Under the pieces are notes generated by a model. The model worked only from the letters and a program-made list of their open reading frames with translations, ran no database searches and was not told the origin of the DNA. Shown piece after piece: positions 13,619 through 46,781 of a DNA stretch of 64,000 nt. The translations under genes were made by a program, and so were the position numbers. The stretch is from Macrostomum lignano (lineage: Eukaryota): the NCBI GenBank assembly GCA_002269645.1, contig NIVC01000858.1:1-64000 (forward strand). Direction: 5' to 3'. Every line of letters begins with the position of its first letter. Within the stretch, counting starts at the first letter, position 1.

Positions 13619-15436
13619 ATGGCAGCGGACAATTCGACAAAAATCCCAACTCTTCTGAGCCAGGTTCTTGAGTGCATTAAGTCATCTAAGGGCGATGCCT
13701 TAGTTACAGGCTTAAAAGAAGTTAATCAGTTTTTTAGCACCGTGAATGAGTATGCCTTTAGACAGATGGGGGCTCAAATGGCCCAAGCTAGTAGTGAAGA
13801 CACCTCAGCGACAGCTGCTGAGAAGCCTGAAACCACCGCCCCTGACGCTAAGAGTCAATCACAGCAACAGTCATCTAGTGATTCGTCCTCTAAGCAGCCA
13901 GTAGCAAAGCAGGCCGAGCAAAGTTCATCCACCGCCCAGGGGACCCCAGCTTCGAAAGACGCAGCTAATGGCGTAAGCAAGTCTGGGGACTCTAGCGTTG
14001 AAGAGCTTGGTCTCCCGAAGCCCAGAGATGGTCACGTGGCTGTTTGCAGTACCTCCATCATGATAAAGCAGATACCAAAGTTTTGGAGCGAAAAGAAGGT
14101 GAAGGAGAGAGCAGAAGAATTTGGCACAGTGACCCGCATCGACTATAAGGCGTTCTTAAACACAGCAGCAGTAACATTTAAGAGCCGATCTGAAGCATTC
14201 AAGGCTATTTCTGGCGTTCCAAAAACTCGACCATTGTCAGTTTCTTGGGAACTGAATTCTGGCATTGCCAACTCTTACTTCAAAAAGTACTGGGATGCGA
14301 ACGATGGCGCCACTTTCATTCCTATCAGCATGTTCCCCTGGATGAAGCAGAAGGACTTGCTGCTTGGCGGGGCGCTGCTATTAGGCAAAGGGCAGCAACC
14401 TGCAGCTAGCAACGCAGCTAATGCTGACGCATCTAGCTCAGCAACGGCTGGCAGCAAAGCGGCCCAGTCTGGCTCTGCAGCCGCACCCAGCTCGGCTAGC
14501 AAAGCTAGTCCAGCAAACAAGAATGCCCCTGTCTCTAAGAGTGCTTCAACCACTCCTACGCAAAGGAATGTTGCTGGTAGTCCAGCCGGTAGTTTCTCCG
14601 GTAACAAGGCTTCTGGCAATGTGCAAAATTCCAAACAGAGCACTAGCTCATCTTTTGGATCGGGATCGAATCAGAAATCAGTTGGTCCGTCAGCAAGAGG
14701 CTCTGCTAGGCATGGAAATCGGTCGCAAGGAGACATTCCGAGCTTGTTTGCTAGCGACTTCACTAAACCGACTCAGCCTCAGTCAAGCACGCCTGCTCAG
14801 TCAGCTGGTCCTCGCTTTGCAACTCCCAGCAATCCTCCGCAGCAGTCCATGCCTCAAGCTGGCCAGCAGCAAAAGCAGGTTCGTCCATACGGTTCGACGC
14901 CATCCATTGGTATTGCTGGATCTGCTCAGCAGCTAAGCAACCCTTTTGCGTCACCAGCCTCAAGAGCGCCTGCTCCAGGTTTTTCAAATATTGGCCAGCA
15001 GCATTCAACTTTTCCGCGTCAGTCACGAAACGTACCTGACGTTCAACTACAGCAGCAGCAACAGCAGAACGCTGCTTTTGGGAAAAGGAATTCCTTAGAT
15101 TCGAACAGCGCCCATGGTGGCGAAATAAAACGACCGCGCATGGATGAACCCATGCAACCTGTGGGCCGCGGCTACGTTCCCGGGCGCAATGCTTCGTTTG
15201 AATCCGGCAGCGCTGATAGGTCCGACATGAGCAGAGGTCCGGAGTACTCACAGCAGACTGGCCGCTCTGCTCCCGGGCCGCAATTTGGCCAGCCCTACGC
15301 CAATCCAGCGCCAGCCGGCCCAGGCATCAGACCCTTTGGAACTCCTAGGCCTGTAAGCAACCAGGGCCTGCTGCAGCCTCCGGCGAATTCCAGATTTGGA
15401 CAGTCGGCACCTCCACCTCGTCCTTTTCGGTTTTAA
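13619..15436 (+). CDS. SCAF4/SCAF8-like RRM protein, 605 aa in one uninterrupted ORF; no CID domain in this ORF
   Basis: Long open frame. The segment VCSTSIMIKQIPK..EEFG..AFKAI..SWELNSGIANSYFKKYWDANDGATFIP resembles the SCAF4/8 RRM and its extension as recalled (VCSTTLWVGQV..EEFG..AWALNKG..FWDVDLGVTYIP). The rest is S/Q/P/G low-complexity. A pyrimidine tract and AG acceptor (tttatttcag|ccc) sit 3 nt before the ATG. Confidence 0.8.
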   Translation: MAADNSTKIPTLLSQVLECIKSSKGDALVTGLKEVNQFFSTVNEYAFRQMGAQMAQASSEDTSATAAEKPETTAPDAKSQSQQQSSSDSSSKQPVAKQAEQSSSTAQGTPASKDAANGVSKSGDSSVEELGLPKPRDGHVAVCSTSIMIKQIPKFWSEKKVKERAEEFGTVTRIDYKAFLNTAAVTFKSRSEAFKAISGVPKTRPLSVSWELNSGIANSYFKKYWDANDGATFIPISMFPWMKQKDLLLGGALLLGKGQQPAASNAANADASSSATAGSKAAQSGSAAAPSSASKASPANKNAPVSKSASTTPTQRNVAGSPAGSFSGNKASGNVQNSKQSTSSSFGSGSNQKSVGPSARGSARHGNRSQGDIPSLFASDFTKPTQPQSSTPAQSAGPRFATPSNPPQQSMPQAGQQQKQVRPYGSTPSIGIAGSAQQLSNPFASPASRAPAPGFSNIGQQHSTFPRQSRNVPDVQLQQQQQQNAAFGKRNSLDSNSAHGGEIKRPRMDEPMQPVGRGYVPGRNASFESGSADRSDMSRGPEYSQQTGRSAPGPQFGQPYANPAPAGPGIRPFGTPRPVSNQGLLQPPANSRFGQSAPPPRPFRF

Positions 15437-18990: not shown

Positions 18991-19510
18991 GAAAGTTGTC
19001 AGCTACTAGTATGAAAGCTGTCACTCCGCAATCTGCTTTTTAAGTAGGTTGCCTTTCTGCCATCCGTCACTCACGGAAGTAACGGAGCCGTCATCAATAC
19101 AATTCATCGTGAAGAACTGCTAGCATGATGGCCATCTTATATAATCCATTGTGTTTAAGCTTTGGATCGACTCCCAAATTACATTGGCACTTATAAAGCG
19201 GAATCGAGAAGGGCGCTTCCCTCCCCTGCTTAGGGTTAAATGCACAATGCGGCCAAGTATCAAATAGTTTCATATCTGGATATCTCAGTACCACTACCCA
19301 ATTCTATGCTGTTGGTTAGACTACTATATAAATAGCTAAGTTGTCTCATGCTTAGCTAGTATTCAGCACCTTGTGTTTAGAGACTAGCCATCTAGTGAAG
19401 GCTTGAGCATGCACGGAGTTCAGTCACCAAGGCAGCCCCTTCCAAACCCACCGCCACGTTTGCAGTGCAGCCTCGCGGCCTCCGCCATCCAACCAGCCTA
19501 AATCTCCGTC

Positions 19511-22500
19511 ATGTCAATCGCTATGGGATTTCCGCCTACCCCGGCCGGCGGCCAGGGCGGCGGCAGCTTCTCTCCGCTGACCATGTTTGAGTGCACCATC
19601 AGCAGCGCCACCATGCTCATTGACAGCATGGCAGTGCGAGACCTGCTCATGGCGTTCAAGATTGTGGCCCAGCTGCACGGCCACCTGCTGGAGGTGCTGG
19701 ACCCCACTGTGCAGCGGCTGGCTACTGTGGCTGATGAGCACAGCCAGGTAAGCTCAATCCAGTGCAGTGTAGATCACCTGTAAACTGTGCCTTGACCACC
19801 GCCTCGGGATTGGCCCAAGATATACTGACCGTGATCCACCCCTATGGAATCACCCCTACACCACCCCTATGGAATCACCCCTGCACCACCCTTATGGAAT
19901 CGCCCCTGCACTATCCCTATGGAATCGCCCCTGCACCACCCTTATGGAATCGCCCCTGCACCACCCTTATGGAATCGCCCCTGCACCACCCTTATGGAAT
20001 CGCCCCTGCACCACCCCTATGGAATCGCCCCTTTGCTATCCCTATGGAATCGCCCCTGTACCACCCCTATGGAATCACCCCTGCGCCACCCCTTTGGAAT
20101 CGCCCAGGCCCAAACAGCAGGAAACCAGCCCATGGGTTCCCTCGCCATCCCTCGCAGTGCCCGCCGCCCGCCTCGCGATCAACAAGCGGCTCTGGCGGCC
20201 TGGCCGGTGTGGCCGCCGCTGCTGCCGCTGCCGCTGCCGCCGGAGCTCCGGGCACGTCGAAGCTGGGCAAGCCGGAGCCGTCCTTCTCCGGTGTCAAGTC
20301 GGAGCCGGGCGCCGATTCCGACGACGACTGCGTCCTGATGGAGGCGGATCTGGTGTACGACGGCTCCGGTGCTGGCGCCGCTGCCTTCGGCCAGAGCCCG
20401 CCCGCCAAGCTGCCCCGTCTCGGCCCAGGCGGCGGTGGCGGCGGCGGCGGCGGCTCCGACCTGTCCGACTCCGGCGAGCTGTCCAACGACTGGAAGGCCA
20501 CGCTGCGCAAGGCCTACCGAGTGCTGAAGGACGAGACTGGCACCAACGTGTTTGACTTCTCCCTGCCCTACTCCGCCCGCGTCAACGTCCTGGCCGCCAA
20601 CCGCGTGATCGACCGAGCGCTCAGCCTCAGCCAATACCAGCCCGCGAACCTGTCCGCCTGGAGAAGTGGGTCTTTCAAGTCATTTCCTGTCATATTCTGT
20701 GTAGGCTACTGCTAGTAGTACGCTTATATCTGGGAGCGGCGGGTTGGCACACTGTTGGCGGTATATTGCCACCATAAAGAGATTATCTAAATTTGGAATT
20801 AAAATCAAACTATTTGAATAATGCATACTGCAAAAATTAAATGCCTTTATTATTGCACTTGTGCCCAATGATCCATTGATCACTACCTTGGCCTGAAGTG
20901 TGCCTCCCCAGCGGTCTCATTGCATATTAGCATGTGATTGTCTGTGCATTATCGAATTTAATTTCACTATAAAACAGACTACAAAAAAGGGCGTTGCAGG
21001 GCCTGATGAGTTGTGCAAATATTTAAAGTTGGTCCGAAATAAAAAAATGCTGCGATATTGGCTGAGCCGTGCAGCTGCCGCGCTGTGGAGCTTTAAAATA
21101 TAACTATAGTAATAATAATAATCGGCCCCGTTGCAAATCGGGGGGTATCGGGGGCCGCCCCCGCTGCACCAATGCTCTCCTTGTATGACAACCTAATCAA
21201 CTAATTATCATAATTTATTAATGCCTATCCAGCGTCGCCGCTTCCCAAAAACCCTCCGCTAAGCAACGGGGGGATTCTCGCTCAGCTGGCAGGGGAATTC
21301 GCGCTTTGCTGGCAGGGGAATTCTCGCTCAGCTGGCAGGGGAATTCTCGCTTTGCTGGCAGGGGAATTCTCGCTCAGCTGGCAGGGGAATTCGCACTCAT
21401 CACCAGAGACTCGCAGCTGGCCATCCGGCGCTGTTTCAGGCGGCTGCAACCGGTACATGTCCGTGTACTTCGGCTGCACGCTGAAGCCCGGCGTCAAGAA
21501 GCTGCACATGGCCTCGCGCTGGAAGAGGCAATTCCTTTTCAGCTTGGTAAGACCTGCGGCCTGCCGACCTCGTCTCCTGTCCCCTGGCAACGCCCTTTGC
21601 ACCTCAGTCTAGGGTAGAAATTGTGTAGCAGCCCTGCAACACTTCGTGGGGTCGGGCTGCTTTGCAGGGCTCTGCTACAGCTACCTGAGCACCTATTTCT
21701 CTTGGACGCTGAAGCCATCGGCCAAGAAGCTCCTTGAGCAGGCGCAGCTGCAGCAGCGGATGGATCGCTTCAAATACCTGGGCTCAGTAAGGCTTAGCTT
21801 TTGGTGACCAGCACTTGCTCCCAGGCCTGGAATGCCCGCAGCGAATCCCCAGCAATTTCTGTGTCCGCTCCGCAATTCAATTGTTTTTGCACTTCCAGTT
21901 GTAGCCGAAAAATACTTTAAAGTGTACTTTAGCGCTGTGCTCAAACGAGATTATAAAGTGCAGCACCAGCAGCGCATCTGCGACAAAGTGTTCCACCGCG
22001 TCCTGGTAGGTGTGCGCAGCTGATCAGCGCCCAGCACCTGCCCGCTACATTAGCCCGATTGGCGAGTGTTTGAAGATGCACAATTCCATGCATATAATGT
22101 GTATTGTTGCAGAGCGGGCGCTGAGTTACTACTCGGGCTATTTCCGCTGCGTATTGCGGCGCGATTATAGGCAGGATTATCTAAAGAATAGCTTCCATCG
22201 AATCTGGGTACGTGTCTGCGCCCCGTGTAGCCAAACCCTACCGTGTCTGGCTCACAAGATGCATACTCAGCAACAGCTAACCACCCCCCCCCCACTCACG
22301 CTGCCACAAGGGCCAAAAGTTTTGCATTCCATCGGTGATTGAGAAAGTTGAGAAACACGAACCCCATCGAGCATGTCTGGCACTTCGTAAAGCGAAGAGT
22401 TCAGCAGCTGGTGTCTGGCAGAATGTGATAATAGTACATTTGATTCTAGACAGGGCAATAGGGGCTCGGAAAATTCGGCGGGTTTTGTGGATAGGAGGCG

Positions 22501-24620
22501 ATGATGAGAGTGGGGTAAGCAGCACGGGTCTGGAATGATAGGGTTTGAGGGGCGATCGATATCAACAATGTGCATAGCATATTGAGTGAAGCGGGGCATT
22601 GGCAGACCAGGCTGTGTCCCTCCATTCTGCCGCCGGCTCTCTGCAACGTCCCAGCCAATTTTTTGTTGCTCCATTGTTTGTTAGGGGGCTGACTGACCCT
22701 GAACTGCCTGTTGTTGCAGGAGGCTGCTCCGCCTACCTTAGCTCCTACTATCGCAGGTACCTAAAGTTTAAATATGTCAGCTCAGAGCGCAGCCAGCAGT
22801 GTCGGCACACGGTGCTCAGTCTTATAGTAAGTTGCGCCTCCCCTGCCAGTTGGGGCTCGGGCGCCTGCAATGCTTCCCCTTGCACTTGGTTGAGAAAATC
22901 ACTGCTAAGAAACTCCTTCCCCGCCCCTGCAGCCCAGTCGCTAAAGTACTTTGGCGGGCATTATCGCAAGAATCTGCAGTGCGCATTTAAGGTCAACAAG
23001 CGGCAGTCGGACACTCGAAGCATTGTTCGGATTAGCCTGGTCAGTTAGTGCGTTTCCTGATTTGTTTGTTAGAGCTGATCGGCCCAGCAACTCTCGGAAA
23101 GGGCAGCTCTCACTGCGCTTGTCTAGGCTAATTCTGTGTTAGCAATTCTTTATAGAGGCCGGATTCAAGTACCTTGGCAGCTGGTTTAATAAGAATCTCA
23201 AGCGGGATTTTAAACAGCAGCAGCAGCAGAGCAAGCTGAACTCAATCTTTCTTGTGCAAACTGTGAGTGCGGACTCGGCTTTGCGCTGTGTTGTGGTGAT
23301 GAATAGCAGTGAGCATTCGCACTGTCTGAGCAGGGGTGGGAGCCTGATTTGTCTGGTTCAGTTGTGTCTGCTGCTAAAGCTATTTTCCTTGTTTAAACTG
23401 CCGAGGGTAAGTCTATTGTGCGACTCTCCCGGCTGCTCTATCCGCGTTCTGCCGAGAACTCTTGGTAACTGGCTTCTAATTTAGTAAATCCCCATCCCAC
23501 CAGCCCGAGAATCCCATCCCATCTACCTGAGAATCCCATCCCATCTCATCTACCTGAGAATCCCCATCCCATCACCCCGAGAATCCCATCTCACCTACCT
23601 GAGAATCCCCATCCCATCAGCCCAGGAATCCCATCTCACCTACCTAAGAGTCCCCATCCCACCAGCCCGAGAATCCCATCCCATCTACCTGAGAATCCCC
23701 ATCCCATCACCCTGAGAATCCCATCTCACCTATTTGAGAAACTCTATCCCATCACCCCGAGAATCCCATCTCACCTACCTGAGAGTCCCCATCCCATCAG
23801 CCCCAGAATCCCATCTCATCCAGCCCCAGAATCCCATCTCATCCAGCCCCAGAATCCCATCTCATCCAGCCCCAGAATTCCATCTCACCTACCTGAGAAT
23901 CCCCATCCCATCAGCCCCAGAATCCCATCTCGTCCAGCCCGAGAATCCCATCTCATCCAGCCCCAGAATCCCATCTCATCCAGCCCCAGAATTCCATCTC
24001 ATCCGGCCCGAGAATCCCATCTCATCCAGCCCCAGAATCCCATCTCGTCCAGGCCGAGAATCCCATCTCATCCGCCCCGAGAATCCCATCTCATCCAGCC
24101 CGAGAATCCCATCTCATCCGCCCCCAGAATCCCATCTCATCCAGCCCCAGAATTCCATCTCATCCGGCCCGAGAATCCCATCTCATCCAGCCCCAGAATC
24201 CCATCTCATCCAGGCCGAGAATCCCATCCTGACCCGCCGGTCCCCCCGCAGAAGCTGAACCGGCGCCAGAAGAGCTACGAGGCCCTGAAGCCCAACCTCG
24301 ACCAGACCGCCCAGACAAAATACGAGAGCGTGCTCAACAGGGACTACACCAGCTCGGATGAAGAAGGCGGTGCCGACTTGGACTCTGAGATGAAGGTGCG
24401 CAGCCTCCCTTGGGAGAGCGCCGAGCTGCGCGAGATGAAGCGTCGATTAGACGAAGTTTTCCTCGAACGCCTCGCCGACGACAAGCAGCGTGCGGACGTT
24501 TTGCGGCTGCAGCGGGACCCAGCTGTGCTGTCCAGCCGCCCGCCTCCCGCCGACCAGCTCGACTGGGCGCGCGACCCAGCCTGGACGGCGTCTCATCCGC
24601 CTGGCGGCGCCACTCAATAA
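19511..24620 (+). CDS. Uncharacterised protein, paralogue 1 (~405 aa), with a seven-exon alternative cassette array
   Basis: Exon 1 19511-19747 (phase 0), exon 2 20158-20665 (ends WR, phase 1), one cassette exon, last exon 24252-24620 (KLNRRQKSYEAL..DYTSSDEE..VRSLPWESAEL..LD). Homologous throughout to the gene at 26248-28423. Confidence 0.85.
19835..20105. repeat. 25-bp minisatellite (caccacccttatggaatcgcccctg)n in intron 1 of paralogue 1
   Basis: Tandem periodicity between the donor at 19748 and the acceptor at 20157. Confidence 0.92.
21278..21395. repeat. Five 23-bp repeats with core ctggcaggggaattc, alternating ctcag/ctttg variants, immediately upstream of the cassette array
   Basis: Cores at 21286, 21309, 21332, 21355 and 21378. 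Confidence 0.92.
21440..21546 (+). CDS. Alternative cassette exon A (107 nt)
   Basis: tttcag|..|gtaaga; phase 1->0; (S)GCNRYMSVYFGCTLKPGVKKLHMASRWKRQFLFSL. Confidence 0.8.
21668..21786 (+). CDS. Alternative cassette exon B (119 nt)
   Basis: ttgcag|..|gtaagg; phase 1->0; (R)LCYSYLSTYFSWTLKPSAKKLLEQAQLQQRMDRFKYLGS. Confidence 0.8.
21899..22005 (+). CDS. Alternative cassette exon C (107 nt)
   Basis: ttccag|..|gtaggt; phase 1->0; (I)VAEKYFKVYFSAVLKRDYKVQHQQRICDKVFHRVL. Confidence 0.8.
22113..22207 (+). CDS. Alternative cassette exon D (95 nt)
   Basis: ttgcag|..|gtacgt; phase 1->0; (K)RALSYYSGYFRCVLRRDYRQDYLKNSFHRIW. Confidence 0.8.
22720..22826 (+). CDS. Alternative cassette exon E (107 nt)
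   Basis: ttgcag|..|gtaagt; phase 1->0; (R)GCSAYLSSYYRRYLKFKYVSSERSQQCRHTVLSLI. Confidence 0.78.
22933..23039 (+). CDS. Alternative cassette exon F (107 nt)
   Basis: ctgcag|..|gtcagt; phase 1->0; (T)QSLKYFGGHYRKNLQCAFKVNKRQSDTRSIVRISL. Confidence 0.78.
23156..23262 (+). CDS. Alternative cassette exon G (107 nt)
   Basis: ttatag|..|gtgagt; phase 1->0; (K)AGFKYLGSWFNKNLKRDFKQQQQQSKLNSIFLVQT. Confidence 0.8.
23488..24232. repeat. ~23-bp minisatellite (agaatcccatctcatccagcccc)n in the last intron of paralogue 1
   Basis: Tandem periodicity; ends ~19 nt before the acceptor at 24251. Confidence 0.93.
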
Positions 24621-25717
24621 CTGAGACGGCGCCAAGGACTGCGGAGAACTGACTTGACTCCTTCCCTACCCCTCCGTATTTTCCCACCTTCCCTATCTCC
24701 TCATTTCCCCATCTTATTTCCCTATCCCCTTATTTCCCCATCTCATTTCCCATCCTTCTTTTTCTCCATCCCCTCATCCCCCATCTTTTCATTTCCCCAT
24801 CCCCTTATTTCCCCATCGCTCTTCATTTCCCCATCCCTTTTTCCTTATCCCCTCATTTGCTCATCTCTCTTCACTTCCCCAACCCCTCATTCCCCTTCTA
24901 ATGTCCTCATCATATTCTCATTTTCTGGCTACTGAAGATGGGGCGCTGCTCCCCCAGCTCATACAAATTCCATTGGCGGCTCTCCCCATTAAAATGCGCT
25001 GGCAGGATTGAGAAAATCGGTTGACTGGTCTGGATGTTTGTCCAGAGGACTTATTCCTAGCCAAGCTTGACTGTTTCCTTTGGCAAACTGATTTAACGAG
25101 ACCAACTCAAAATTGAGAGTGCAGCGCCCTTCACTGCAGTAGAACCGGACCCCTCACACCCCGTATGGTCGAATCCCTATTCGCGAGTTGAGTATTGTAT
25201 AATGTCAAGTCGCTCATTGCTGTGAACTGACTGCTTTTTAACACTGCCACAAGCCCCCTAATTGTTTGCATTTTCCTCCCATTGTTCAACTGTAATTCTC
25301 CCCCAATGGTTGTCCGGCACATCCGCAACCTTTGGGTTCCGCTTGATCGCCCGGAGTCCGGGCGCATTTTCGCTTCTGTAATTCGCTTCCGCCCTGCCTG
25401 GCGGCTGATGTTCGTCTTTGCTTATTATAAATGATTACTGCTATGTATTTCATTACTGTCACTTTTCTGCTATTGACTATGCTGTGCTGTTGTGTTCTCA
25501 ATCAGTTCTCAAATATACGGCCAGTCTATCATCTTAGCACCTGTATTTACTCACCCGGTCACACTGCTCTGCTCTGTGACCACCGACTTGACAGTAAAGC
25601 AAGGATATGAATTTGTTGCAGAATTCCTCAGCAGTAAGTAGGCTTAATACTACTTATTAATCCCTAGATAGCAGTCAGAGTCCAGAACCGATTCATGGCC
25701 AGTTTAAGCAACGCAAA

Positions 25718-26087: not shown

Positions 26088-26247
26088 ATCTGACTCGTCT
26101 TAGCAAATTCCGCCAGTAATTCGCACTCAATATGCCCATGAGTAAAAGTCGGCCAGTAGAACTAGATGCATTTTTGCATTGCGTGGATTTGTAGTCACAG
26201 CTGTGTTGAAAACCATTTTTCATGCAGACCGACTAGTTTGCCCAGCA

Positions 26248-28423
26248 ATGGCCGCCGCCGTCCTTCAGCACCAGCAGCAGCAGCAGCCGGCTTTCTCTAC
26301 GCTGACCCTGTTCGAGTCCACCCTGATGAACGCGGGCATGCTGCTGGACAGCATGACTCTGGACGACCTGTGCGCCGCGCTGCGCCTCATCAACAACCTG
26401 CACCTGCAGCTGGTGGACATCATGCAGCCCTCGGCCGCCGATGTGCAGCTCCGGCTCGTCCGCGCGAGCACCGACTGGCCGAGGCGGCGCCGCTGCCGCT
26501 GCCTGTGCAGCAGCCGTCTGCGCAGGAGTCGGAGCCGCAGATCCCAGCAGATCGGAAGCGGCCTCTGCAACATTCTGCTGAGGAATTCCGCGAGTCCAAG
26601 GTTCGTTTGGCTGATACTAACGGCGAGGCTGGCGGCGGCGGCTGCGGCATTCTCGTCCACCAAGTCAACTCCGCCGACAACTTCAACGAGGCAGCCGACG
26701 ACGAAGCGGCGCTCGTTGACGATTCGGAGTCTGCCGCGCAACTAACTGCCGGCTGTCCATCAATCTTGAGCTGCAGCGGCGGAGAATTTTCCAGCTCTGC
26801 CAACAACTGCTGGAGCGGCAACGTTCGGGTGAGCCTGCTGGCCTGGCTAGTCTGAGCACTCTGGTCTGTGCCTGGGCACTCGTTAGTGTCTGAGCACTCT
26901 AGTCTGTGTCTGGGCACTCGTTAGTGTCTGAGCACTCTAGTCATTGTCTGGGCACTCGTTAGTGTCTGAGCACTCTAGTATGTGCCTGGGCACTCAGTGT
27001 CTGAGCACTGTAGTCTGTCTGGGCACTCGTTAGTGTCTGAGCACTCTAGTCTGTGCCTGGGCACTCGTTAGTGTCTGAGCACTCTAGTCTGTGCCTGGGC
27101 ACTCAGTGTCTGAGCACTGTAGTCTGTCTGGGCACTCGTTAGTGTCTGAGCACTCTAGTCATTGTCTGGGCACTCGTTAGTGTCTGAGCACTGTAGTCTG
27201 TGTCTGGGCACTCGTTAGTGTCTGAGCACTCTAGTCTGTGTCTGGGCACTTGTTAGTGTCTGAGCACTCTAGTCTGTGTCTGTGCACTCGTTAGTCTGTG
27301 CACTCATTAGTGTCTGAGCACTCTAGTCTGTGTCTGGGCACTCTAGTTTGAGAGTTTCAGTTGAATGAAATCAAGCAGAAGCAGAAATTTGCCCACAGAA
27401 CATACTGCAAGATGCTTACAAGAAGCTCCGAGGCAGCGGTCCTCACTTGTTCGACTTCTCCAAGAGGTAGGGTGCGCGCCTAGTTGGCTACTCAATCAGT
27501 GCTCACTCAGCCACCTCCCCAAGCCCTGCAAGCCGCTTTCCCTTGCCGCCCTCAGCTGGGAGCACTCGATCAATCAGGACGCGGCTCGCAGCGTCTTGGA
27601 CTTGGTGAGGGATGAATCTGGCATCGAGGCCGACGAGGACACCTGGAAAAGTGAGTCTTTAGCCAGTCTTTATTGCTGCATTGCTTGCGCGACTCTCGAG
27701 TCAGTCATAGTCAAACCGGAATGCCGCCCGCAGAGCTGTACCAGTACTACCTGCGGGAGAGCAAGCGGGTCCAGTGCAACAGGCGGACTGCTGCCCGCTG
27801 CAACCGGATGAAGGCGGTGAGGCTTTTTGGAATACAGATTCTCATTTGTGTCCTTAACCGTGGTGCTAGCCAGAATTAGCCCCCATTAACTGAGTAAAAA
27901 TCGCCCCCCCCCCCTACACCAATTGAGAATCGCCCGTGCACCTAGCAAGAATCGCCCCGTACACCTAGTGAAAATCGCCCCGTACACCTAGCGAGAATCG
28001 CCCCGTACACCTAGTGAGAATCGCCCCGTACACCTAGTGAGAATCACCCCGTACACCTAGTGAGAATCGCCAATCCCCATCGCATCGCAGAAGCTCGGCC
28101 GGCGCCAGAAGGCATTCGAGTCTCTGCTGCCGCACCTGTCCCCAGACGAGCTCAACCAGTTCCGCGCCGTGCTGTCCCGGGATTTCACCTCCTCAGACGA
28201 GGAAGACGAGACCGCCTCAGGCAGCGGTGAGGCCGAGGACGAGCAGGCGAATCTGCGGGTGCGCAGCCTGGTGTGGGAATCCGCCGCCGTCGCCGACATC
28301 AAGCGCCGCCTGGATGACACCTTCTATGCCCGCTTCGCCACCGTCAAGCAGCGCGCCCAGCTCGCCCGCTGCCAGCGTTTCGACGGCGCTGAAAGCAACG
28401 GGGGCAGCCCCGGGAGCTCCTGA
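26248..28423 (+). CDS. Uncharacterised protein, paralogue 2 (single exon at the cassette position); apparent 1-nt frameshift in exon 1
   Basis: Exons 26248-26828, 27399-27466 (NILQDAYKKLRGSGPHLFDFSK), 27556-27650 (SWEHSINQ..DEDTWK, phase 1), 27734-27816 (LYQYYLRESKRVQCNRRTAARCNRMKA, phase 1->0) and 28091-28423 (KLGRRQKAF..DFTSSDEE..VRSLVWESAAV..LD). The N-terminal FSTLTLFESTL..MLLDSM matches FSPLTMFECTI..MLIDSM of paralogue 1. Confidence 0.8.
26848..27348. repeat. ~38-bp minisatellite in intron 1 of paralogue 2
   Basis: Unit ctagtctgtgtctgggcactcgttagtgtctgagcact. Confidence 0.92.
27898..28075. repeat. 23-bp minisatellite (cgccccgtacacctagtgagaat)n in the last intron of paralogue 2
   Basis: Tandem periodicity; ends just before the acceptor at 28090. 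Confidence 0.88.
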
Positions 28424-37200: not shown

Positions 37201-40200
37201 AGAATCCAGTCAACAGTCAGACCAGTTTTGTGCTCATTTTCCTGTTGGCATGGCAACTCAGCAGCGGCGATAGCGCACGGTTTGCAATGGCCTGATGGAC
37301 CTTTGAGCTCAGCGAGGCCGCGCTTGGAGAATGTCGCCTGCGTCACCAGGGACACCGGCAGAAACCAATGCCCATTGCGCCAATTGCGTTCCCACCGCTG
37401 CGCTATCTTAGAGATAACAGGGCTGTGCGGGCTCGCTAGATTGGGGCCGAGAATCTTTATTGCACAGCTGTGCGTTGCAGACTTTATTGGGCTTTGCTCG
37501 CTAGGTAACTGGGTATTGATAACAGTTACTGTCCTGCAGTCTGAGTCCACCATCTCAGTCTCAGTGGATCAATATCAGTGCAGTCTGTGGTCAGCCTAGA
37601 TTGATCAGTGCAGTCTGTGGTCAGCATAGATTGATCAGTGCAGTCTGTGGTCAGCCTAGATTGATCAGTGCAGTCTGTGGTCAGCCTAGATTGATCAGTG
37701 CAGTCTGTGGTCAGCCTAGATTGATCAGTGCAGTCTGTGGTCAGCCTAGATTGATCAGTGCAGTCTGTGGTCAGCCTAGATTGATCAGTGCAGTCTGTGG
37801 TCAGCCTAGATTGATCAGTGCAGTCTGTGGTCAGCCTAGATTGATCAGTGCAGTCTGTGGTCAGCCTAGATTGATCAGTGCAGTCTGTGGTCAGCCTAGA
37901 TTGATCAGTGCAGTCTGTGGTCAGCCTAGATTGATCAGTGCAGTCTGTGGTCAGCCTAGATTGATCAGTGCAGTCTGTGGTCAGCCTAGATTGATCAGTG
38001 CAGTCTGTGGTCAGCCTAGATTGATCAGTGCAGTCTGTGGTCAGCCTAGATTGATCAGTGCAGTCTGTGGTCAGCCTAGATTGATCAGTGCAGTCTGTGG
38101 TCAGCCTAGATTGATCAGTGCAGTCTGTGGTCAGCCTAGATTGATCAGTGCAGTCTGTGGTCAGCCTAGATTGATCAGTGCAGTCTGTGGTCAGCCTAGA
38201 TTGATCAGTGCAGTCTGTGGTCAGCCTAGATTGATCAGTGCAGTCTGTGGTCAGCCTAGATTTTAAACATTAAAGTCCATGTTTTTCTCCGCAGTGCTTG
38301 CAGCTGGAATTCATACACGAGGAGGTGAACAAGGAGAACTCCAGCCTCATCCATCACCATCACGACCATGACCACCATGATCACCATGATCACCACGCGT
38401 TCCATGGCTCTGCCCACACCAGCTGGGAGGACTTTCTCTCCGAGCACCCGTGGTACCTGTGGCGCTGCTGCACCGTGTTCGGGGGCATCTACCTGTTCTT
38501 CCTTATCGAACGCCTGCTCAAAGAGCTCATCCGGATGAAGGCAAGTCCAATTCAAGAGCACCTGAAAAGCTGCCGATATGTAGCGATAATAACTTTTCAA
38601 CTTCAGCCAATCAGAAGTTGAATCTGCTGGTGGGGTTCTGAGAACAGCATTGTTGGATATTGTAAAGGAGTTCGGCTTTTAAAACCCATTTTCCAAGACA
38701 TCGCTGGGCTGCTCTGATTGGCTGACGCAACCAAATTCCCCACAGGGAGGCGGCAGCTTCGGCCACGGTCACTCGCACGCGCTGCCGGAGCCGCAGCTGC
38801 AGCAGGAGGACTCGTCTACCGCCCTGGCCAGCTACAAGTCCGCCCGCGTCTCCCCGGCCCCGCCAGTCGATGCGGAGTCGCCGCGTCAAAAAGAGGCTCC
38901 GCCGTCCGGGGAGCCGGCGGCGTACGGGGCGGCCACCGTCCTGCCGGTGGAGGTCGCGGAGGACGGCGCCGCCTGCTGTAGCGACGGCGCGGCTGCTGGC
39001 AGCGGCAGCGGCGGCAACGCGGGCTCCGTGTCCACCCGCCTGGTGAAGGTGCAGCCGGTGGCCTGGATGATTTTGCTGGGCGACGCGCTGCACAACTTCG
39101 TCGACGGCCTGAGCATCGGGGTGGCCTTCAGCCGCTCCACCCTCAGCGGCGTCAGCATCTCCTTGGCGGTGCTGTGCGAGGAGCTGCCGCACGAGCTCGG
39201 CGACTTCGCCATCCTGCTGTCGGCCGGGATGTCCATGCCGATGGCGCTGCTGTGCAACTTCCTGTCCGCCTGCACCTGCTACCTTGGCTTCGCGCTGGGC
39301 GTCGCACTGGGCGAAACCGACGCCAGCGTGTGGATCTTCGCCATCGCCAGCGGCATGTTCTTGTACATCGGCCTGGTGGACATGGTGAGCTTGGGGCTGG
39401 CATCCTGTGTCCGATGAGGTCCGGGGTGTCCGATGGGATCCGGGGTGTCCGATGAGGTCCGGGGTGTCTGGTGGTGTCCGGGGTGTCTGGTGGGTCCGGG
39501 GGTGTCCGATGGGATCCGGGGTGTCCGATGAGGTCCGGGGTGTCTGGTGGTGTCCGGGGTGTCTGGTGGGTCCGGGGGTGTCCGATGGGATCCGGGGTGT
39601 CCGATGAGGTCCGGGGTGTCCGATGGGATCCGGGGTGTCCGATGAGGTCCGGGGTGTCCAATGGGCTCCGGGGCGTCTGCTGGGATCCGAGGTGTCCGAT
39701 GAGGTCCCGGGTGTCCGATGAGGTCCGGGGTGTCCGATGGGGTCCGGGGTGTCCGATGGGGTCCGGGGTGTCCGATGAGATCCGGGTGTCCGATGGGGTC
39801 CGGAGTCCGATGAGGTCCGGGGTGTCCGATGGGGTCCGGGGTGTCTGATGAGATCCGGGGTGTCCGATGGGGTCTGGGGTGTCCGATGGGGTCCGGGGTG
39901 TCCGATGGGGTCCGGGGTGTCCGATGAGATCCGGGTGTCCGATGGGGTCCGGGGTGTCCGATGGGGTCCGGGGTGTCCGATGGGGTCCGGGGTGTCCGAT
40001 GAGGTCCAGGGTGTCCGATGGGGTCCGGGGTGTCCGATGAGGTCCGGGGTGTCCGATGGGGTCCGGGGTGTCCGATGGGGTCCGGGGTGCGGGGTGTCTG
40101 GTGGGTCCGGGATGGCCATCTTAAATCTGCTGGTGGGGTTCTGAGAACAGCACTGTTGGATATTATAAAGGAGTTGCTGAGACAGTGTGGAACAGTGAAG

Positions 40201-41358: not shown

Positions 41359-42285
41359 CTAGTGCAGGCCTTGCCGCCTCACCTTCTCCTCCAGCTCAGC
41401 GATCCGGGCATCCTTGGCACTGCTCTCCATCTGCAGCTCAGCGATCCGGTCATCCTTCTCCAGGTCCCGCTTCAAAAACTCCAGCGCCGTTTTCAGGGCC
41501 TCCTCGGTCTCCCCGTTCAGCTGGATGGCTCCGGCTATGTCGACGCTGCTCTTCAGATCAGAGGCGATGGCGTGCAGCTTGCCGGAGTTGAGTTTGATGT
41601 CAGCGGCCAGCTGTCGCATCTCTTTCACATTGAGCACCGTATGGGCGGCCAACGCCCCAGCTCCAGCGCTACAGACGGCACCAGCAGTGATGGCGCCAGC
41701 AGCAGCCCAGGTGGCTCCCCCGGTGAAGAAGCCGAAAGCCAAAGCGCCAGCTCCAAGAGCCGCCAGGCCGACTGTTCCAGCGGCTCCCCAGTTCCTGGAG
41801 CGGCTGGCTGCCCTGTCCGTCTCCTCAGACTGCTGCTTCAGCTTCTCCGCCAGCCGCACCGCGAGCTGCTGCGACTTACTGAGGTGGCCCACGAAGCTGT
41901 CGAAAGCACCGAAGAAGTCTTTGGCCATTCTATGGGCCTTGTCCAGTTCGTCGCTAAACTCTTCAATATTCGCAGGTGGAATGTTGAAGCGACCCAAGAT
42001 TTTCGAACGAAGACAGTCCTCAAAATCCTTGATTTTCTCAGGGAATTTCTTAAGCCAAACCTCAAGCTTTTCCTCGGATTCAAGAACCATCTGCAACTCC
42101 TGCTTCAGCTTCTCCATCAGCGGCTCATGTGGAAGGTTGATTTTTTCAACTTGTCTGGCATTGTCCCTCGTGCTTTCAGCAATAATTTCCAGCTCGGAAT
42201 TTTTTTTTTTAAGCAGCTTCATGGTCTTGACTGCGTCACCAAGGCCAGCCAGCACCTTGCCGATATTGCTCAGGTTCTCTGACAT
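41359..42285 (-). CDS. Intronless 308-aa coiled-coil protein with a central Gly/Ala-rich hydrophobic hairpin (ApoL/ClyA-like architecture), copy 1
   Basis: Open frame. Heptad-rich helices flank WGAAGTVGLAALGAGALAFGFFTGGATWAAAGAITAGAVCSAGAGALAAH; clearly paralogous to the next two ORFs. Confidence 0.85.
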   Translation of the reverse strand: MSENLSNIGKVLAGLGDAVKTMKLLKKKNSELEIIAESTRDNARQVEKINLPHEPLMEKLKQELQMVLESEEKLEVWLKKFPEKIKDFEDCLRSKILGRFNIPPANIEEFSDELDKAHRMAKDFFGAFDSFVGHLSKSQQLAVRLAEKLKQQSEETDRAASRSRNWGAAGTVGLAALGAGALAFGFFTGGATWAAAGAITAGAVCSAGAGALAAHTVLNVKEMRQLAADIKLNSGKLHAIASDLKSSVDIAGAIQLNGETEEALKTALEFLKRDLEKDDRIAELQMESSAKDARIAELEEKVRRQGLH

Positions 42286-43535: not shown

Positions 43536-44282
43536 TTAGTTCTCAGTCCTTACTAAGGAACTCAAGCACACTTCCCTTTCACATTCACGCGCCTTGTAAA
43601 CACATGATTCCAGCTCCTTAGCAATCACGTGCAACTTGCTAGACTTCTCTTCGATGTCAGCGGCCATGCTTTGCGTCTTTTTCACGCTGAGCACCGTGTG
43701 GGTGGCCATGCACTGCTCCAGTTCGGAACCATATGCGGAACCAGCGAAAGCGCCAGCAGCAACCCAGGTGGCTCCGCCGGTAAAGAAGTCTTCAAGAACA
43801 GCCAGGCCGACGGTGCCAGCGGCTCCCCAGTTCCTGGAGCGGCTGGCTGCCCTGTCCATCTCCTCAGACTGCTGCTTCAGCTTCTCCTCCAGCTGCACCG
43901 CGAGCTGCTGCGACGTACTGAGGTGGCCCACGAAGCTGTCGAAAGCGTCGTAGATGCTTTCAGTCATGTTGTGGGTCTTGTCCAGTTTTTCGCTAAACTC
44001 TCTAACAGGAATGTTTCTTGCTGCACGAAGCAAGTCCTCGAACTTCTTGATTTTCACAAGAAATGCCTTGAGCCCGACCTCAAGCTTTGCCCCGGACTCC
44101 CGAACCCTATGCAATTCCTGCTTCAGCCTCTCCAGCAGCGACTCCTGTGGCAGGTTGATTGCTTCAACTTTGCTGGCATTGTCCTTCGTGCTTTCAATAA
44201 TGTTGCACAGCTCGGAACTGTTCCTTTGAAGCAGCTTCATGGTCTTGGCTGCTTGACCAATGTTTATCAGCACCTCGTCCAT
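43536..44282 (-). CDS. Intronless paralogue, copy 2 (~248 aa; shortened hairpin with charged residues, short C-terminus)
   Basis: ATG at 44282. Shares INLP.E.LL..LKQEL, FVGHLS.SQQLAV.L.EKLKQQSEE.DRAASRSRNWGAAG and FFTGGATW with copy 1. Confidence 0.78.
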   Translation of the reverse strand: MDEVLINIGQAAKTMKLLQRNSSELCNIIESTKDNASKVEAINLPQESLLERLKQELHRVRESGAKLEVGLKAFLVKIKKFEDLLRAARNIPVREFSEKLDKTHNMTESIYDAFDSFVGHLSTSQQLAVQLEEKLKQQSEEMDRAASRSRNWGAAGTVGLAVLEDFFTGGATWVAAGAFAGSAYGSELEQCMATHTVLSVKKTQSMAADIEEKSSKLHVIAKELESCVYKARECEREVCLSSLVRTEN

Positions 44283-45472
44283 CACGACCAGCCTCTCCGA
44301 TCCGATTAGACGTTAAACAGCAAAGTTTCACTATTTATTCTTGCCTTAAAAATATGCAGAGAAGTCTTTTGGGGGTCTTAAATAGTGCATAAGCCGTGTA
44401 GATTGAAATAAACGGAAGTTCCCTTTCTATTTTGAGTAACTTGTGTTTCAGAGTACACCCAGTACACTTTAAAGTCCGAGAGCGCACGAGTGAAAGGCAG
44501 TGTTGCTTTTCTGTTAAATCCGAGCCGACTGCCCCAAGTAACCAACAGTTCCCTTTTTATAGCGTACATTGGCGTTTCCTTAGGGTTTCATTAACCGCAC
44601 CCAGTGCCTGCGAATGAATAATTGCTATGAATAGAATAAAATGAAAAATAACTTTTCTCAAAACGTTCTGACGCACCCTCAGTTCAATGAAGAGTTCGGT
44701 TAAGAGCGGGTCGGCTGCGCGATTCAAGGATTTTGTACAGAAATGCGTCATAATAGGCGTCAATATTAGAGTCATAAGCTACTTACATGCGAAGTTAAAC
44801 CATCCAAAAGCAGTGCATGCCTTTTTCACGCAGACAAAGCAGCACTGAGTGCTTAAGAACTGTGTGGAACTGCCTGTCTCTCTCGTAATTCTTAAAAAAA
44901 TTCTGTACGACAAATATTTCACAAAAGATAAAACAAAGAGTAATTTGCTGTTTAAAACTGTTTAATTGTAAAAACGTGAAAGCAAACAAATAGGACAGAT
45001 AAGTCTGCACCCCCACAGCCTTTCGGTAAAAAACCTTCATGTCAAGTCTTCACTGCTCGCGATGCAGTCTAGGAGAAGAAATTTGCCTTCGATATTTAAC
45101 GATTTTGATGGGACATTGTGGAATGACGATTAGAGCTGAAGAAAAATTTTGTGACAAGTTATTACTTTCTACTTTAAGTATATAGACAATATAGACAGAA
45201 TGTGTGTCTAACACTGAAAGAGTAAGATCGAAAAGAGTAAAACTTTTAAAAGAAGTTTATCAACTGCCGTAACTACACGTACACGGTTTCTATTAAGTTC
45301 GGGAGTGGAGAAAAACCTGTTATGAGTTGCGTGAGGCGTGTCCGAGAGAACTTTCAGTTGTGCACTCCTGCACTTCAGTAAAAAATCAAATTTTGCCGTG
45401 CTGCCTTAACTGCTTATTCAGCCGCGCAATCATTTCATCCTTGGCGGCAAGCTCCTTTTGTTGCTGGGCAAT

Positions 45473-46306: not shown

Positions 46307-46781
46307 GACTAAACAGAATTTCACTGCCTACCCAGTCAGCAGTAACTCCGGCTGGAGATGTCAAAAAAAATTTTGTGCCTTGCGTTGAGAAACTTTATAC
46401 AGAGTTGGCTGCTGGGTCGGTTGCGCACATTGGTACAAATAATGTCTCAACGATGCGCACTGCAGCTGTCACATCGAGTCACAGAGTGCTGTGTGCGCTG
46501 GACAAAAACTGAAGTTCCCTTTTTTCACAGCATACATTGTCACTGAGAGCATTGCCATGAACTTAATTCCCGCAAATCATTTCTCTACCTTATGTAGTCA
46601 GAGCAAGATGCAAATGAGCCAACTTGCTCTGAGCAGGAGTTCTGACTCTCTCTCAGCACAATGATCAAGCCGTTTAAGTTCGGAATGGCTCACTGTGCCC
46701 GCCGCTCGAGAGTTCTGAATCTGAGTTGGGGTGGCGCACGGCAAACCATGTTTTTAAAGCACAATTGCTAAGACTCTTTTT

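What the first reader, a model, noticed from the sequence alone, without database searches (positions are those of the whole stretch)
20665..24252. Seven-way mutually exclusive exon array (Dscam-like) in an uncharacterised gene
Seen: seven segments (21440-21546, 21668-21786, 21899-22005, 22113-22207, 22720-22826, 22933-23039, 23156-23262) lie between a phase-1 donor at 20665 and a phase-0 acceptor at 24252. Each has a YAG acceptor, a GT donor, an open frame and phase 1->0; lengths are 107/119/107/95/107/107/107 nt. Counting from the junction codon, all seven have Tyr at 6, an aromatic or His at 10, Phe/Tyr at 11, Leu at 15 and mostly Lys/Arg at 16, yet they are otherwise very divergent. Exactly one exon restores the frame; zero or two break it. 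Inference: an old exon-duplication array kept under selection and giving seven isoforms. The ORF track does not reveal it, and I do not recognise it as a described cluster. The introns between cassettes (106-121 nt, one of 512 nt) look long enough to splice, so steric exclusion is unlikely to be the mechanism.
Basis: partly seen in the sequence, partly recalled or inferred. Interest (0 to 1): 0.93.

Follow-up and report, generated by a model that had tools for sequence, protein, structure and literature searches.

The report
Flatworm seven-choice alternative exon array
An uncharacterised gene of the flatworm Macrostomum lignano carries seven interchangeable versions of one exon, only one of which can be used per mRNA, and its introns hold the same kind of RNA "docking site plus selectors" device that insects use to pick one exon in Dscam.

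Summary
Seven homologous cassettes with AG/GT borders, open in phase 1->0 (107/119/107/95/107/107/107 nt), lie between the donor at 20665 and the acceptor at 24252 of M. lignano gene BOX15_Mlig034464g3. The array is old and under selection. Four ancient paralogous genes carry collinear arrays, giving 26 cassettes in all, every one intact. Synonymous sites between them are saturated, yet cassette types are retained.

New here is a likely mechanism. A 28-nt docking site (20986-21013, core CGTTGCAGGGC) sits in the intron after the constant exon. It is complementary to a selector 50-68 nt upstream of cassettes 2-7 (-27.6 to -35.2 kcal/mol; 0 of 300-400 shuffles reach this). Unbiased scans of the four paralogs each pick the same conserved core, and docks fit their own selectors best (1 of 120 permutations). 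This is the architecture of Dscam exon 6.

Frame adds a second safeguard: any two cassettes put a stop codon in the second one.

Transcript-based models show single inclusion of first, middle or last cassettes across the family. Only cassette 7 here has a transcript-derived model; cassette 1 appears only in a second, irregular model of unverified basis. The protein family is conserved in metazoans but unnamed. The cassette forms the middle of a long predicted helix.

The parts
19511..19747 (+). Exon 1 of the gene (ATG at 19511; ends ...ADEHSQ, donor gtaagc)
   Evidence: Located by translation against P0001. The gene span equals L001 10001-15420.
20158..20665 (+). Exon 2, the constant exon before the array. 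It ends in phase 1 (spare A), donor GTGGGT.
   Evidence: The same phase-1 'A|gt' end is found in all four paralogs.
20986..21013 (+). Docking site AAAGGGCGTTGCAGGGCCTGATGAGTTG (conserved core CGTTGCAGGGC at 20992-21002), about 320 nt into the intron after exon 2
   Evidence: Best of all 24-nt windows of that intron for pairing with the regions upstream of the cassettes; 0 of 400 shuffles reach it. It is the longest conserved block of this intron between paralogs. The core occurs exactly once per locus, on the + strand.
21183..21212 (+). Second conserved intronic element TTGTATGA..AATCAACTAATTA, between the dock and cassette 1; role unknown
   Evidence: Short conserved blocks and the sequences read in all five loci.
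21269..21399 (+). 23-nt minisatellite (5.7 copies) just upstream of cassette 1; copy number differs between assemblies
21394..21437 (+). Possible weak, split selector for cassette 1 (ACTCATCA plus the acceptor-proximal part); uncertain
   Evidence: Duplex of -28.3 kcal/mol with a 16-nt bulge; only an 8-nt exact match. First cassettes of most paralogs also lack a clear selector.
21440..21546 (+). Cassette 1 (107 nt) SGCNRYMSVYFGCTLKPGVKKLHMASRWKRQFLFSL
   Evidence: Used in model P0002.
21564..21599 (+). Selector 2 (core CCCTGGCAACGCCCTTT at 21582-21598), 68 nt before the acceptor of cassette 2
   Evidence: -35.2 kcal/mol with the dock; 16 matched positions.
21668..21786 (+). Cassette 2 (119 nt) RLCYSYLSTYFSWTLKPSAKKLLEQAQLQQRMDRFKYLGS
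   Evidence: Its counterpart in L002 is also 119 nt.
21816..21838 (+). Selector 3, 60 nt before the acceptor of cassette 3
   Evidence: -31.7 kcal/mol
21899..22005 (+). Cassette 3 (107 nt) IVAEKYFKVYFSAVLKRDYKVQHQQRICDKVFHRVL
22014..22044 (+). Selector 4 (GCGCAGCTGATCAGCGCCCAGCACCTGCCC), 68 nt before the acceptor of cassette 4 and 8-10 nt after the donor of cassette 3
   Evidence: -35.0 kcal/mol; 23 matched positions.
22113..22207 (+). Cassette 4 (95 nt) KRALSYYSGYFRCVLRRDYRQDYLKNSFHRIW
22600..22652 (+). Selector 5 (split; core CTGCAACGTCC at 22641-22651), 67 nt before the acceptor of cassette 5
   Evidence: -27.6 kcal/mol, the weakest of selectors 2-7
22720..22826 (+). Cassette 5 (107 nt) RGCSAYLSSYYRRYLKFKYVSSERSQQCRHTVLSLI; the most divergent
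22856..22882 (+). Selector 6 (TCGGGCGCCTGCAATGC...), 50 nt before the acceptor of cassette 6
   Evidence: -31.7 kcal/mol
22933..23039 (+). Cassette 6 (107 nt) TQSLKYFGGHYRKNLQCAFKVNKRQSDTRSIVRISL
   Evidence: 56% identical to cassette 2 of L004.
23072..23096 (+). Selector 7 (CTGATCGGCCCAGCAAC...), 59 nt before the acceptor of cassette 7
   Evidence: -30.6 kcal/mol
23156..23262 (+). Cassette 7 (107 nt) KAGFKYLGSWFNKNLKRDFKQQQQQSKLNSIFLVQT
   Evidence: It is the cassette in the RNA-seq-derived GenBank model P0001.
23491..24228 (+). 23-nt minisatellite (about 32 copies) filling most of the last intron; length differs between assemblies
   Evidence: No docking-like complementarity was found in this intron.
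24252..24620 (+). Last coding exon (KLNRRQKSYEAL ... GGATQ, stop), phase 0 acceptor

Best explanation
This is a genuine cluster of seven mutually exclusive exons in Macrostomum lignano gene BOX15_Mlig034464g3. Each cassette encodes an alternative version of about 36 residues in the middle of one long helix. The protein belongs to a conserved but unnamed metazoan family.

The choice of one cassette most likely works as in Dscam exon 6. A single docking site in the intron after the constant exon (20986-21013) can pair with only one selector at a time. The selectors lie 50-68 nt upstream of cassettes 2-7. The duplex loops out the cassettes in between and brings the chosen acceptor next to the donor of exon 2.

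A second safeguard is the reading frame. All cassettes are 3n+2 nt, so any mRNA with two or more cassettes has a stop codon in the second one, which makes it a likely target of nonsense-mediated decay. Skipping truncates the protein.

Shown here: the array, its age and conservation, the complementarity, its conservation and co-variation in paralogs, and the frame consequences. Inferred: that the RNA duplexes form and direct splicing, that unselected cassettes are kept silent, that NMD removes errors, and that all seven are expressed.
For: ANATOMY AND HOMOLOGY.

AGE AND SELECTION
- Four paralogous genes (L002-L005) have arrays of 3-7 cassettes, all AG..GT, open, and 2 mod 3 in length.
- Cassette types match across loci in the same order. 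Examples: window 6 with L004 cassette 2 at 56%; window 7 with the last cassettes of L002 and L005 at 44-47%; window 2 with L002 cassette 2, both 119 nt.
- dS is saturated while dN is 0.37-0.9; the recent pair in L005 has dN/dS 0.09.
- There are no differences in cassettes between two assemblies, against 14-16 events in about 1,970 nt of unique intron.

DOCKING AND SELECTORS
- The best window of 24 nt sums to -208.6 kcal/mol against a shuffled mean of -170.0 (sd 7.4); 0 of 400 shuffles reach it.
- The pairings with each selector are explicit.
- The 32-nt dock averages -33.6 kcal/mol against -25.3 (sd 1.3) for shuffled docks and -25.2 for shuffled introns; 0 of 300 each.
- An unbiased scan of each paralog returns the same core: CGTTGCAGGGC, or CATTGCAAGGC in L002. 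z scores are -2.8 to -4.6 (shuffled dock) and -2.7 to -6.2 (shuffled introns).
- The core is the top conserved intron block and is unique per locus.
- It is absent from the single-cassette paralogs.
- Selectors pair with locus-specific flanks of the dock. The cognate dock/selector assignment is the best of 120 permutations.
- Matches are orientation-specific, antisense over sense (Wilcoxon 1e-4).

FRAME.

TRANSCRIPTS
- GenBank models derive from RNA-seq (PMC5730564). They include exactly one cassette: cassette 7 here (P0001), cassette 1 of L002 (P0004) and cassette 5 of 7 in L003 (P0003).
- The L004 model (P0006) carries cassette 3 followed by apparent read-through into the downstream intron.
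- The L005 model (P0007) is skipped and frameshifted.
- P0004 and P0005 are the same gene with different cassettes.
Against: - There is no direct RNA evidence for cassettes 2-6 of this gene; database searches for such isoforms found none.
- Cassette 1 has no convincing selector, and the same holds for the first cassettes of most paralogs.
- Selector 5 is weak and split.
- L002 and L004 have few selectors, and their statistics are modest (3 and 4 of 300 shuffled docks reach the observed value).
- G.U-type mismatches do not significantly outnumber A.C-type ones over all loci (22 v 13, p 0.18; 6 v 0 in the window).
- Duplex energies come from a thermodynamic model of naked RNA. No experiment supports the pairing.
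- How the cassettes downstream of the chosen one are skipped is unknown, as it also is for Dscam exon 6 (PMC6071210).
Confidence: 0.7

Rival explanations
1. The array is a real mutually exclusive cluster, but exclusivity comes only from the reading frame, NMD and competition between splice sites. The dock/selector complementarity is then an unused relic of duplicating one arm of an ancestral intronic hairpin together with the exon.
For: Duplication of a hairpin arm along with an exon is an expected by-product of tandem exon duplication (PMC6071210). The frame alone makes every multi-cassette mRNA nonsense. Cassette 1 lacks a clear selector.
Against: A relic should have decayed. The inter-cassette introns are otherwise unalignable and synonymous sites between paralogs are saturated. 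Yet the docking core is retained in five genes, and selectors track the locus-specific flanks of their own dock.
Confidence: 0.14
2. Only one or two cassettes (7, perhaps 1) are functional exons. The others are unused exon duplicates that happen still to be open.
For: Only cassettes 7 and 1 appear in deposited protein models of this gene.
Against: All seven keep AG, GT, frame and the core residues. Cassette types 2, 3 and 6 have intact counterparts in paralogs that diverged long enough to saturate dS. Paralog transcripts use first, middle and last cassettes. There is no polymorphism in any cassette. The annotation pipeline kept only isoforms at 75% or more of the major one (isoform-frac 0.75), so the absence of minor isoforms is expected.
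Confidence: 0.06
3. The shared motif is a binding site for a protein, either on DNA (orientation-free) or on RNA, rather than one partner of an RNA-RNA duplex.
For: The G.U versus A.C asymmetry is not significant over all loci. The conserved core is short (11 nt).
Against: The arrangement is strictly one sense copy plus antisense copies at a fixed distance upstream of acceptors. An RNA-binding protein would not recognise both a sequence and its complement. Pairing extends into flanks that differ between loci, and the selectors follow those flanks. In the window all six transition mismatches are G.U-compatible.
Confidence: 0.06

Closest known systems
Dscam1 exon 6 cluster of insects and crustaceans (docking site / selector sequences; Graveley model as summarised in PMC6071210)
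   Same: Tandem homologous variable exons whose length is not a multiple of three. One conserved docking site in the intron just after the upstream constant exon. One selector upstream of each variable exon, each complementary to overlapping parts of the same dock, so that only one duplex can form. The dock is the most conserved intronic element.
   Different: The gene and protein are unrelated: no Ig or FN3 domains, and no Pfam hit at all. The phylum is different (Platyhelminthes). There are 7 variants instead of 48. The system is repeated in at least five paralogous genes. The first cassette lacks a clear selector. There is no experimental support, and no known repressor equivalent to the one postulated for Dscam.
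Insect 14-3-3zeta, Mhc and MRP1 clusters and Dscam exons 4 and 9 (docking site downstream of the cluster; PMC6071210)
   Same: Competing intronic RNA pairings select one exon from a tandem array.
   Different: In those genes the dock lies in the intron after the cluster and the selectors lie downstream of each variant. Here no docking-like site exists in the last intron; the dock lies before the cluster.
Two-exon mutually exclusive pairs controlled by competing RNA structures in mammals (e.g. ATE1 exons 7a/7b, PMC7797038, listed)
   Same: Intronic elements compete for one partner.
   Different: Those have two exons only. Here there are seven, with a single shared dock.
Frame/NMD-policed mutually exclusive exons
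   Same: Cassette lengths are 3n+2, so zero or two cassettes break the frame.
   Different: [quoted passage not shown] Here 4 or 7 cassettes add up in frame, but every such product still has a stop in the second cassette, so frame policing covers all combinations.
Partial hairpin duplication model for the origin of selectors (Ivanov and Pervouchine 2018, PMC6071210)
   Same: The duplicated unit would be 'selector plus cassette', leaving the single dock outside. This matches the layout seen here and in the paralogs.
   Different: No ancestral dock-plus-one-selector hairpin was found in the single-cassette relatives examined.

Membership tests
Cluster of mutually exclusive, tandemly duplicated exons | Tandem exons that are homologous and of similar length | tested here: met
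   Seven cassettes of 95-119 nt. A profile built from other loci finds them as the top seven hits in the window.
Cluster of mutually exclusive, tandemly duplicated exons | Same splice phase at both ends and intact splice sites in every variant | tested here: met
   All are AG..GT, phase 1->0 and open. The same holds for the 19 paralog cassettes.
Cluster of mutually exclusive, tandemly duplicated exons | Mature mRNAs contain exactly one variant, and each variant is used | tested here: inconclusive
   RNA-seq-derived models contain one cassette each: this gene cassette 7; paralogs a first, a middle and a last cassette. One model is skipped. No read-level data exist for cassettes 2-6.
Docking-site/selector competing RNA structures (Dscam exon 6 type) | One docking site in the intron flanking the cluster, conserved between homologous genes | tested here: met
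   20986-21013. The same core is found at the equivalent place in four paralogs, is unique per locus, and is the top conserved intron block.
Docking-site/selector competing RNA structures (Dscam exon 6 type) | A selector next to every variable exon, complementary to the dock beyond chance | tested here: met
   Met for cassettes 2-7 (-27.6 to -35.2 kcal/mol; 0 of 300-400 shuffles). Cassette 1 is doubtful.
Docking-site/selector competing RNA structures (Dscam exon 6 type) | Selectors overlap on the dock, so that pairings exclude one another | tested here: met
   All predicted duplexes use dock positions 20985-21013, including the core.
Docking-site/selector competing RNA structures (Dscam exon 6 type) | Co-variation of dock and selectors in evolution | tested here: met
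   The cognate assignment is the best of 120 permutations; for the 3' flank alone, 4 of 120 are as good or better. The L002 dock variant CATTGCAAGGC is matched by the selector GGCCATGCAATGC. Only five loci were available, so the smallest possible p is 0.008.
Docking-site/selector competing RNA structures (Dscam exon 6 type) | Disrupting and then restoring the pairing changes and then restores exon choice | not testable with these tools
   Needs minigenes or transgenic worms.
Dscam gene family | Ig and fibronectin III domain cell-surface protein | tested here: not met
   No Pfam domain. The predicted structure is helical. All relatives are 'uncharacterized protein'.
Steric or spliceosome-incompatibility exclusion | The intron between variants is too short to splice, or the splice sites are mixed U2/U12 | tested here: not met
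   Introns are 106-512 nt. All donors are GT of the U2 type (gtaaga, gtaagg, gtaggt, gtacgt, gtaagt, gtcagt, gtgagt) and all acceptors are AG.
NMD-policed exclusivity | Multiple inclusion creates a premature stop upstream of the last exon junction | tested here: met
   All 21 pairs, all 35 quadruples and all seven together stop inside the second cassette. Whether NMD acts on them was not testable.

The most novel reading that the evidence does not exclude
A docking-site/selector splicing switch of the Dscam exon 6 type arose independently in flatworms. It is maintained in a whole gene family (at least five genes and 26 cassettes in M. lignano), where it swaps the middle of one helix of a conserved, functionally unknown metazoan protein. 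As far as the searched literature shows, this would be the first multi-exon docking/selector system outside arthropods, and a natural replicate for testing how such systems originate.
Probability: 0.6. Interest if true: 0.85.

Novelty: new member of a known kind. Interest (0 to 1): 0.78.

Why it matters
Large clusters of mutually exclusive exons governed by one docking site and many selectors are known mainly from Dscam1 and a few other insect genes. Whether the design is an arthropod peculiarity or a general outcome of tandem exon duplication is still open.

This case is an independent example in another phylum. It is replicated in five paralogs that have diverged past synonymous saturation, so it offers natural co-variation data. 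M. lignano is also transgenesis-capable, so the model can be tested by mutation.

It also shows that frame policing can cover every combination in a seven-exon cluster. Finally, it marks the one segment that evolution chose to diversify in an unstudied protein family that is conserved across several metazoan phyla.

Tried and rejected
- **Searches for other isoforms.** Two protein-database searches looked for deposited isoforms with cassettes 2-6. One used a full-length isoform alignment and one used 100-residue junction constructs. Neither found any. One search did not even return P0001, so it is uninformative.
- **Protein identity.** Pfam on the protein and on 20 family members gave no family. 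A PDB sequence profile gave nothing. Foldseek against the PDB had no match at E <= 0.001; the Zeste/Myb-like hit has probability 0.14 and is not usable.
- **Rfam** on 19000-25500: no match.
- **A dock in the last intron**, or selectors downstream of the cassettes: the sums are far weaker (-146 v -208 kcal/mol). Rejected.
- **MAFFT of the inter-cassette introns:** essentially unalignable, so it cannot show selector conservation.
- **Ungapped pattern search for the dock:** insensitive to bulged and G.U pairings. It is useful only to show that the dock is unique in the window.
- **dN/dS between paralogous cassettes:** dS is saturated, so no ratios except for two pairs.
- **Dispersed-repeat origin of dock and selectors:** rejected, because the core occurs once per locus.
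- **An ancestral dock in single-cassette relatives:** not found.
- **Literature.** Searches for mutually exclusive exons in Macrostomum or flatworms found nothing relevant.
Full report
**1. What is there**

The window is Macrostomum lignano DNA: every protein hit is from that species. The locus matches GenBank NIVC01000020.1, gene BOX15_Mlig034464g3.

The gene has four kinds of coding parts:
- exon 1 (19511-19747);
- exon 2 (20158-20665, ending in phase 1);
- the seven cassettes;
- a last coding exon (24252-24620).

The resemblance is not chance. A profile built only from cassettes of other loci ranks these seven as the best seven of 2,874 six-frame segments in the window (E 8e-13 to 0.096; the next segment has E 1.5). 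Leave-one-out recovers six of seven; cassette 5 is the most divergent.

**2. The array is old and under selection**

The gene belongs to a family with several M. lignano paralogs. I fetched four paralogous loci (L002-L005). Each has an array at the same place, between a phase-1 'A|gt' donor and an 'ag|AAGCT(G/C)AAC' acceptor. The arrays hold 3, 7, 3 and 6 cassettes. All 19 are bounded by AG and GT, open, and 2 mod 3 in length.

Cassette types are shared across loci and keep their order:
- 'TLKP' types come first.
- A 119-nt type is present in the window (cassette 2) and in L002.
- A 'GGHY..KNL' type links window cassette 6 to L004 cassette 2 (56% identical).
- An 'SW(F/Y)..LKRDF..VQT' type comes last.

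So the array predates the paralogs. Between paralogs the synonymous sites are saturated while dN is 0.37-0.9. The single young duplicate pair (L005 cassettes 5 and 6) has dN/dS 0.09.

The window and the GenBank assembly differ at 14-16 places in about 1,970 nt of unique intron sequence. They differ nowhere in the 749 nt of cassettes. At the intron rate about 5-6 differences would be expected (my arithmetic; Poisson P about 0.002-0.005).

**3. A docking site and selectors**

I scanned every 24-nt window of the intron after exon 2 for pairing with the sequence upstream of each cassette. One site stands out: 20988-21011, inside AAAGGGCGTTGCAGGGCCTGATGAGTTG (20986-21013). Its summed energy is -208.6 kcal/mol, against -170.0 (sd 7.4) for dinucleotide shuffles of the site; none of 400 shuffles reaches it.

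The partners are discrete segments 50-68 nt upstream of the acceptors of cassettes 2-7, at -27.6 to -35.2 kcal/mol. All overlap the same core of the dock, so only one can pair at a time. With a 32-nt dock the mean over cassettes 2-7 is -33.6. Shuffled docks give -25.3 (sd 1.3) and shuffled introns give -25.2; 0 of 300 shuffles reach the observed value in either control. No comparable site exists in the last intron.

Cassette 1 has only a weak, split candidate selector.

**4. Independent replication in the paralogs**

The same unbiased scan was run separately in each paralog. In every one the top window contains the same core:
- L003: ..GGACGTTGCAGGGCTC..
- L004: ..GGGCGTTGCAGGGCCG..
- L005: ..GGGCGTTGCAGGGCCA..
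- L002: the variant ..GCGCATTGCAAGGCC..

Supporting points:
- These are the longest conserved blocks of introns that are otherwise unrelated (19 nt exact between L005 and the window).
- The exact core occurs once per locus, on the + strand.
- It occurs once in the 64-kb window.
- It is missing from the single-cassette relatives of the family.
- Shuffle tests are significant in each paralog. Against shuffled docks, z is -4.6, -4.2, -3.5 and -2.8 for L003, L005, L002 and L004. Against shuffled introns, z runs from -2.7 to -6.2.

Beyond the core, the dock flanks differ between loci, and the selectors follow their own flank. The window flank is CTGATGAGTTG, the L005 flank is CATCGCAAAGAT and the L003 flank is TCTCTCATTGA.

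After removing row and column effects, the cognate dock/selector assignment is the best of all 120 permutations. For the 3' flank alone, 4 of 120 permutations are as good or better. Complementary-strand matches beat same-strand matches in 19 of 26 introns (Wilcoxon 1e-4). All six transition mismatches in the window are G.U-compatible. Over all loci the excess is not significant (22 v 13).

**5. Frame as a second safeguard**

Each single cassette restores the frame. Skipping gives a stop 107 nt into the last exon. All 21 pairs stop inside the second cassette. None of the 35 quadruples, nor all seven together, reads through. Such mRNAs would carry a stop upstream of an exon junction, which is the usual trigger of NMD (established knowledge; not tested here).

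**6. Transcript evidence**

GenBank models of this assembly derive from RNA-seq through StringTie and TACO, with an isoform-fraction filter of 0.75. That filter keeps little beyond the major isoform (PMC5730564).

| Model | Locus | Cassette content |
|---|---|---|
| P0001 | this gene | cassette 7 only |
| P0004 | L002 | its first cassette |
| P0005 | L002, a second annotation | its last cassette; otherwise identical to P0004 over the residues they share (P0005 lacks the N-terminal part) |
| P0003 | L003 | cassette 5 of 7, joined to a last exon 12.6 kb away |
| P0006 | L004 | cassette 3, followed by apparent read-through into the downstream intron |
| P0007 | L005 | none; skipped and frameshifted (…AWRKAEPSPEK…) |

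Single inclusion of first, middle and last cassettes is therefore documented across the family. Cassettes 2-6 of this gene are not documented, and searches for them failed. P0002 contains cassette 1 followed by odd read-through. I treat it as a gene prediction, which is my assumption.

**7. The protein**

There is no Pfam, PDB-sequence or PDB-fold match. A profile search finds 280 relatives. Those looked up are 'uncharacterized' proteins of a sea star, an acorn worm, amphioxus, a mussel and a snail. In these relatives the cassette-equivalent segment is a single 'A..(R/K)Y(F/W)..' stretch followed by basic residues.

AlphaFold2 gives pLDDT mostly above 90 for residues 185-406. It places the cassette (residues 248-283 of P0001) in the middle of one 56-residue helix, H244-299. 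The spacing of the invariant residues (6, 10, 11, 15) would put them on one face of that helix. My inference is that this face packs against the domain while the rest of the surface varies. What the helix binds is unknown.

**8. Comparison with known systems**

The layout has three features: the dock lies just after the upstream constant exon, a selector lies upstream of each variant, and the pairings are mutually exclusive. That is the layout of Dscam exon 6. It is not the downstream-dock layout of 14-3-3zeta, Mhc, MRP1 or Dscam exons 4 and 9 (PMC6071210).

The layout also fits that paper's model in which an exon is duplicated together with one arm of an intronic hairpin. The protein is unrelated to Dscam. 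I found no report of such a cluster in flatworms. The library searched is incomplete.

**9. Caveats**

- The RNA pairing is computed, not observed.
- Cassette 1 and most first cassettes lack a clear selector.
- Selector 5 is weak.
- With five loci the co-variation test cannot go below p = 0.008.
- How the cassettes downstream of the chosen one are silenced is unknown.
- A second conserved intron element (21183-21212) and the two minisatellites that flank the array are unexplained.

Noticed in passing
window 21183-21212 (counterparts start near L002 12339, L003 11664, L004 12246, L005 11690): A second conserved intronic element, TTGTATGA..AAT(C/T)AACTAATTA, lies 100-190 nt downstream of the docking site in all five array-bearing genes. 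It resembles a branch-point or STAR-protein motif (CTAAT) and a homeodomain site (TAATTA). Its role is unknown.
   Followed up: partly
window ~26179-28378 (+): A tandem paralog of the same family (gene B) lies just downstream of the array gene. The cassette profile finds no cassette there, and no docking-like core was found in the one intron searched (27646-28095, or over the whole gene in L001). The same gene order (array gene, then gene B) is seen in L002-L005; L004 and L005 also have a third family member upstream.
   Followed up: partly
window 21269-21399 and 23491-24228: Two 23-nt minisatellites flank the array. One is just before cassette 1 and the other fills the last intron. Both differ in copy number between the window and the GenBank assembly (one extra unit; several hundred nt).
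   Followed up: partly
window 19836-20105: A 25-nt minisatellite in the intron between exons 1 and 2 carries GCCCCTGCACCACC, which is complementary to the dock with 3 mismatches in four of its copies. This is probably chance in a GC-rich repeat.
   Followed up: no
window 47.6-54.0 kb and 56.1-62.5 kb: A tandem duplicate about 8.46 kb long, with identical long ORFs at 47888-48742/56350-57204, 50047-51426/58510-59889 and 53478-54017/61940-62479. The second copy has a frameshift in the 773-aa ORF, splitting it into 539 and 376 aa. From the layout of long, partly overlapping ORFs it may be a retroelement; this was not tested.
   Followed up: no
window 41359-42285, 43536-44285, 45473-46324 (- strand): Three tandem paralogous ORFs (249-308 aa) that share a glycine-rich hydrophobic stretch (NWGAAGTVGLA...FFTGGATW.AAGA). 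The first has only a weak SLATT_1 hit (E 0.002, below the Pfam cutoff).
   Followed up: no
window 38947-39417 (+) amid proline-rich repeats at 38.6-40.4 kb: A ZIP metal-transporter-like ORF fragment (HELGDF motif). The GenBank gene at the matching place in L001 has a Pfam Zip hit.
   Followed up: no
window 13619-15436 (+): An intronless 605-aa ORF, low-complexity and Ser/Gln-rich, with a sub-threshold RRM hit (E 0.0015). It is annotated as a 606-aa gene in GenBank.
   Followed up: no
L003 14181-25527: In paralog Mlig012439 the last intron of the array is about 11 kb long. The annotated transcript joins cassette 5 to the last exon across cassettes 6 and 7 and this intron.
   Followed up: partly
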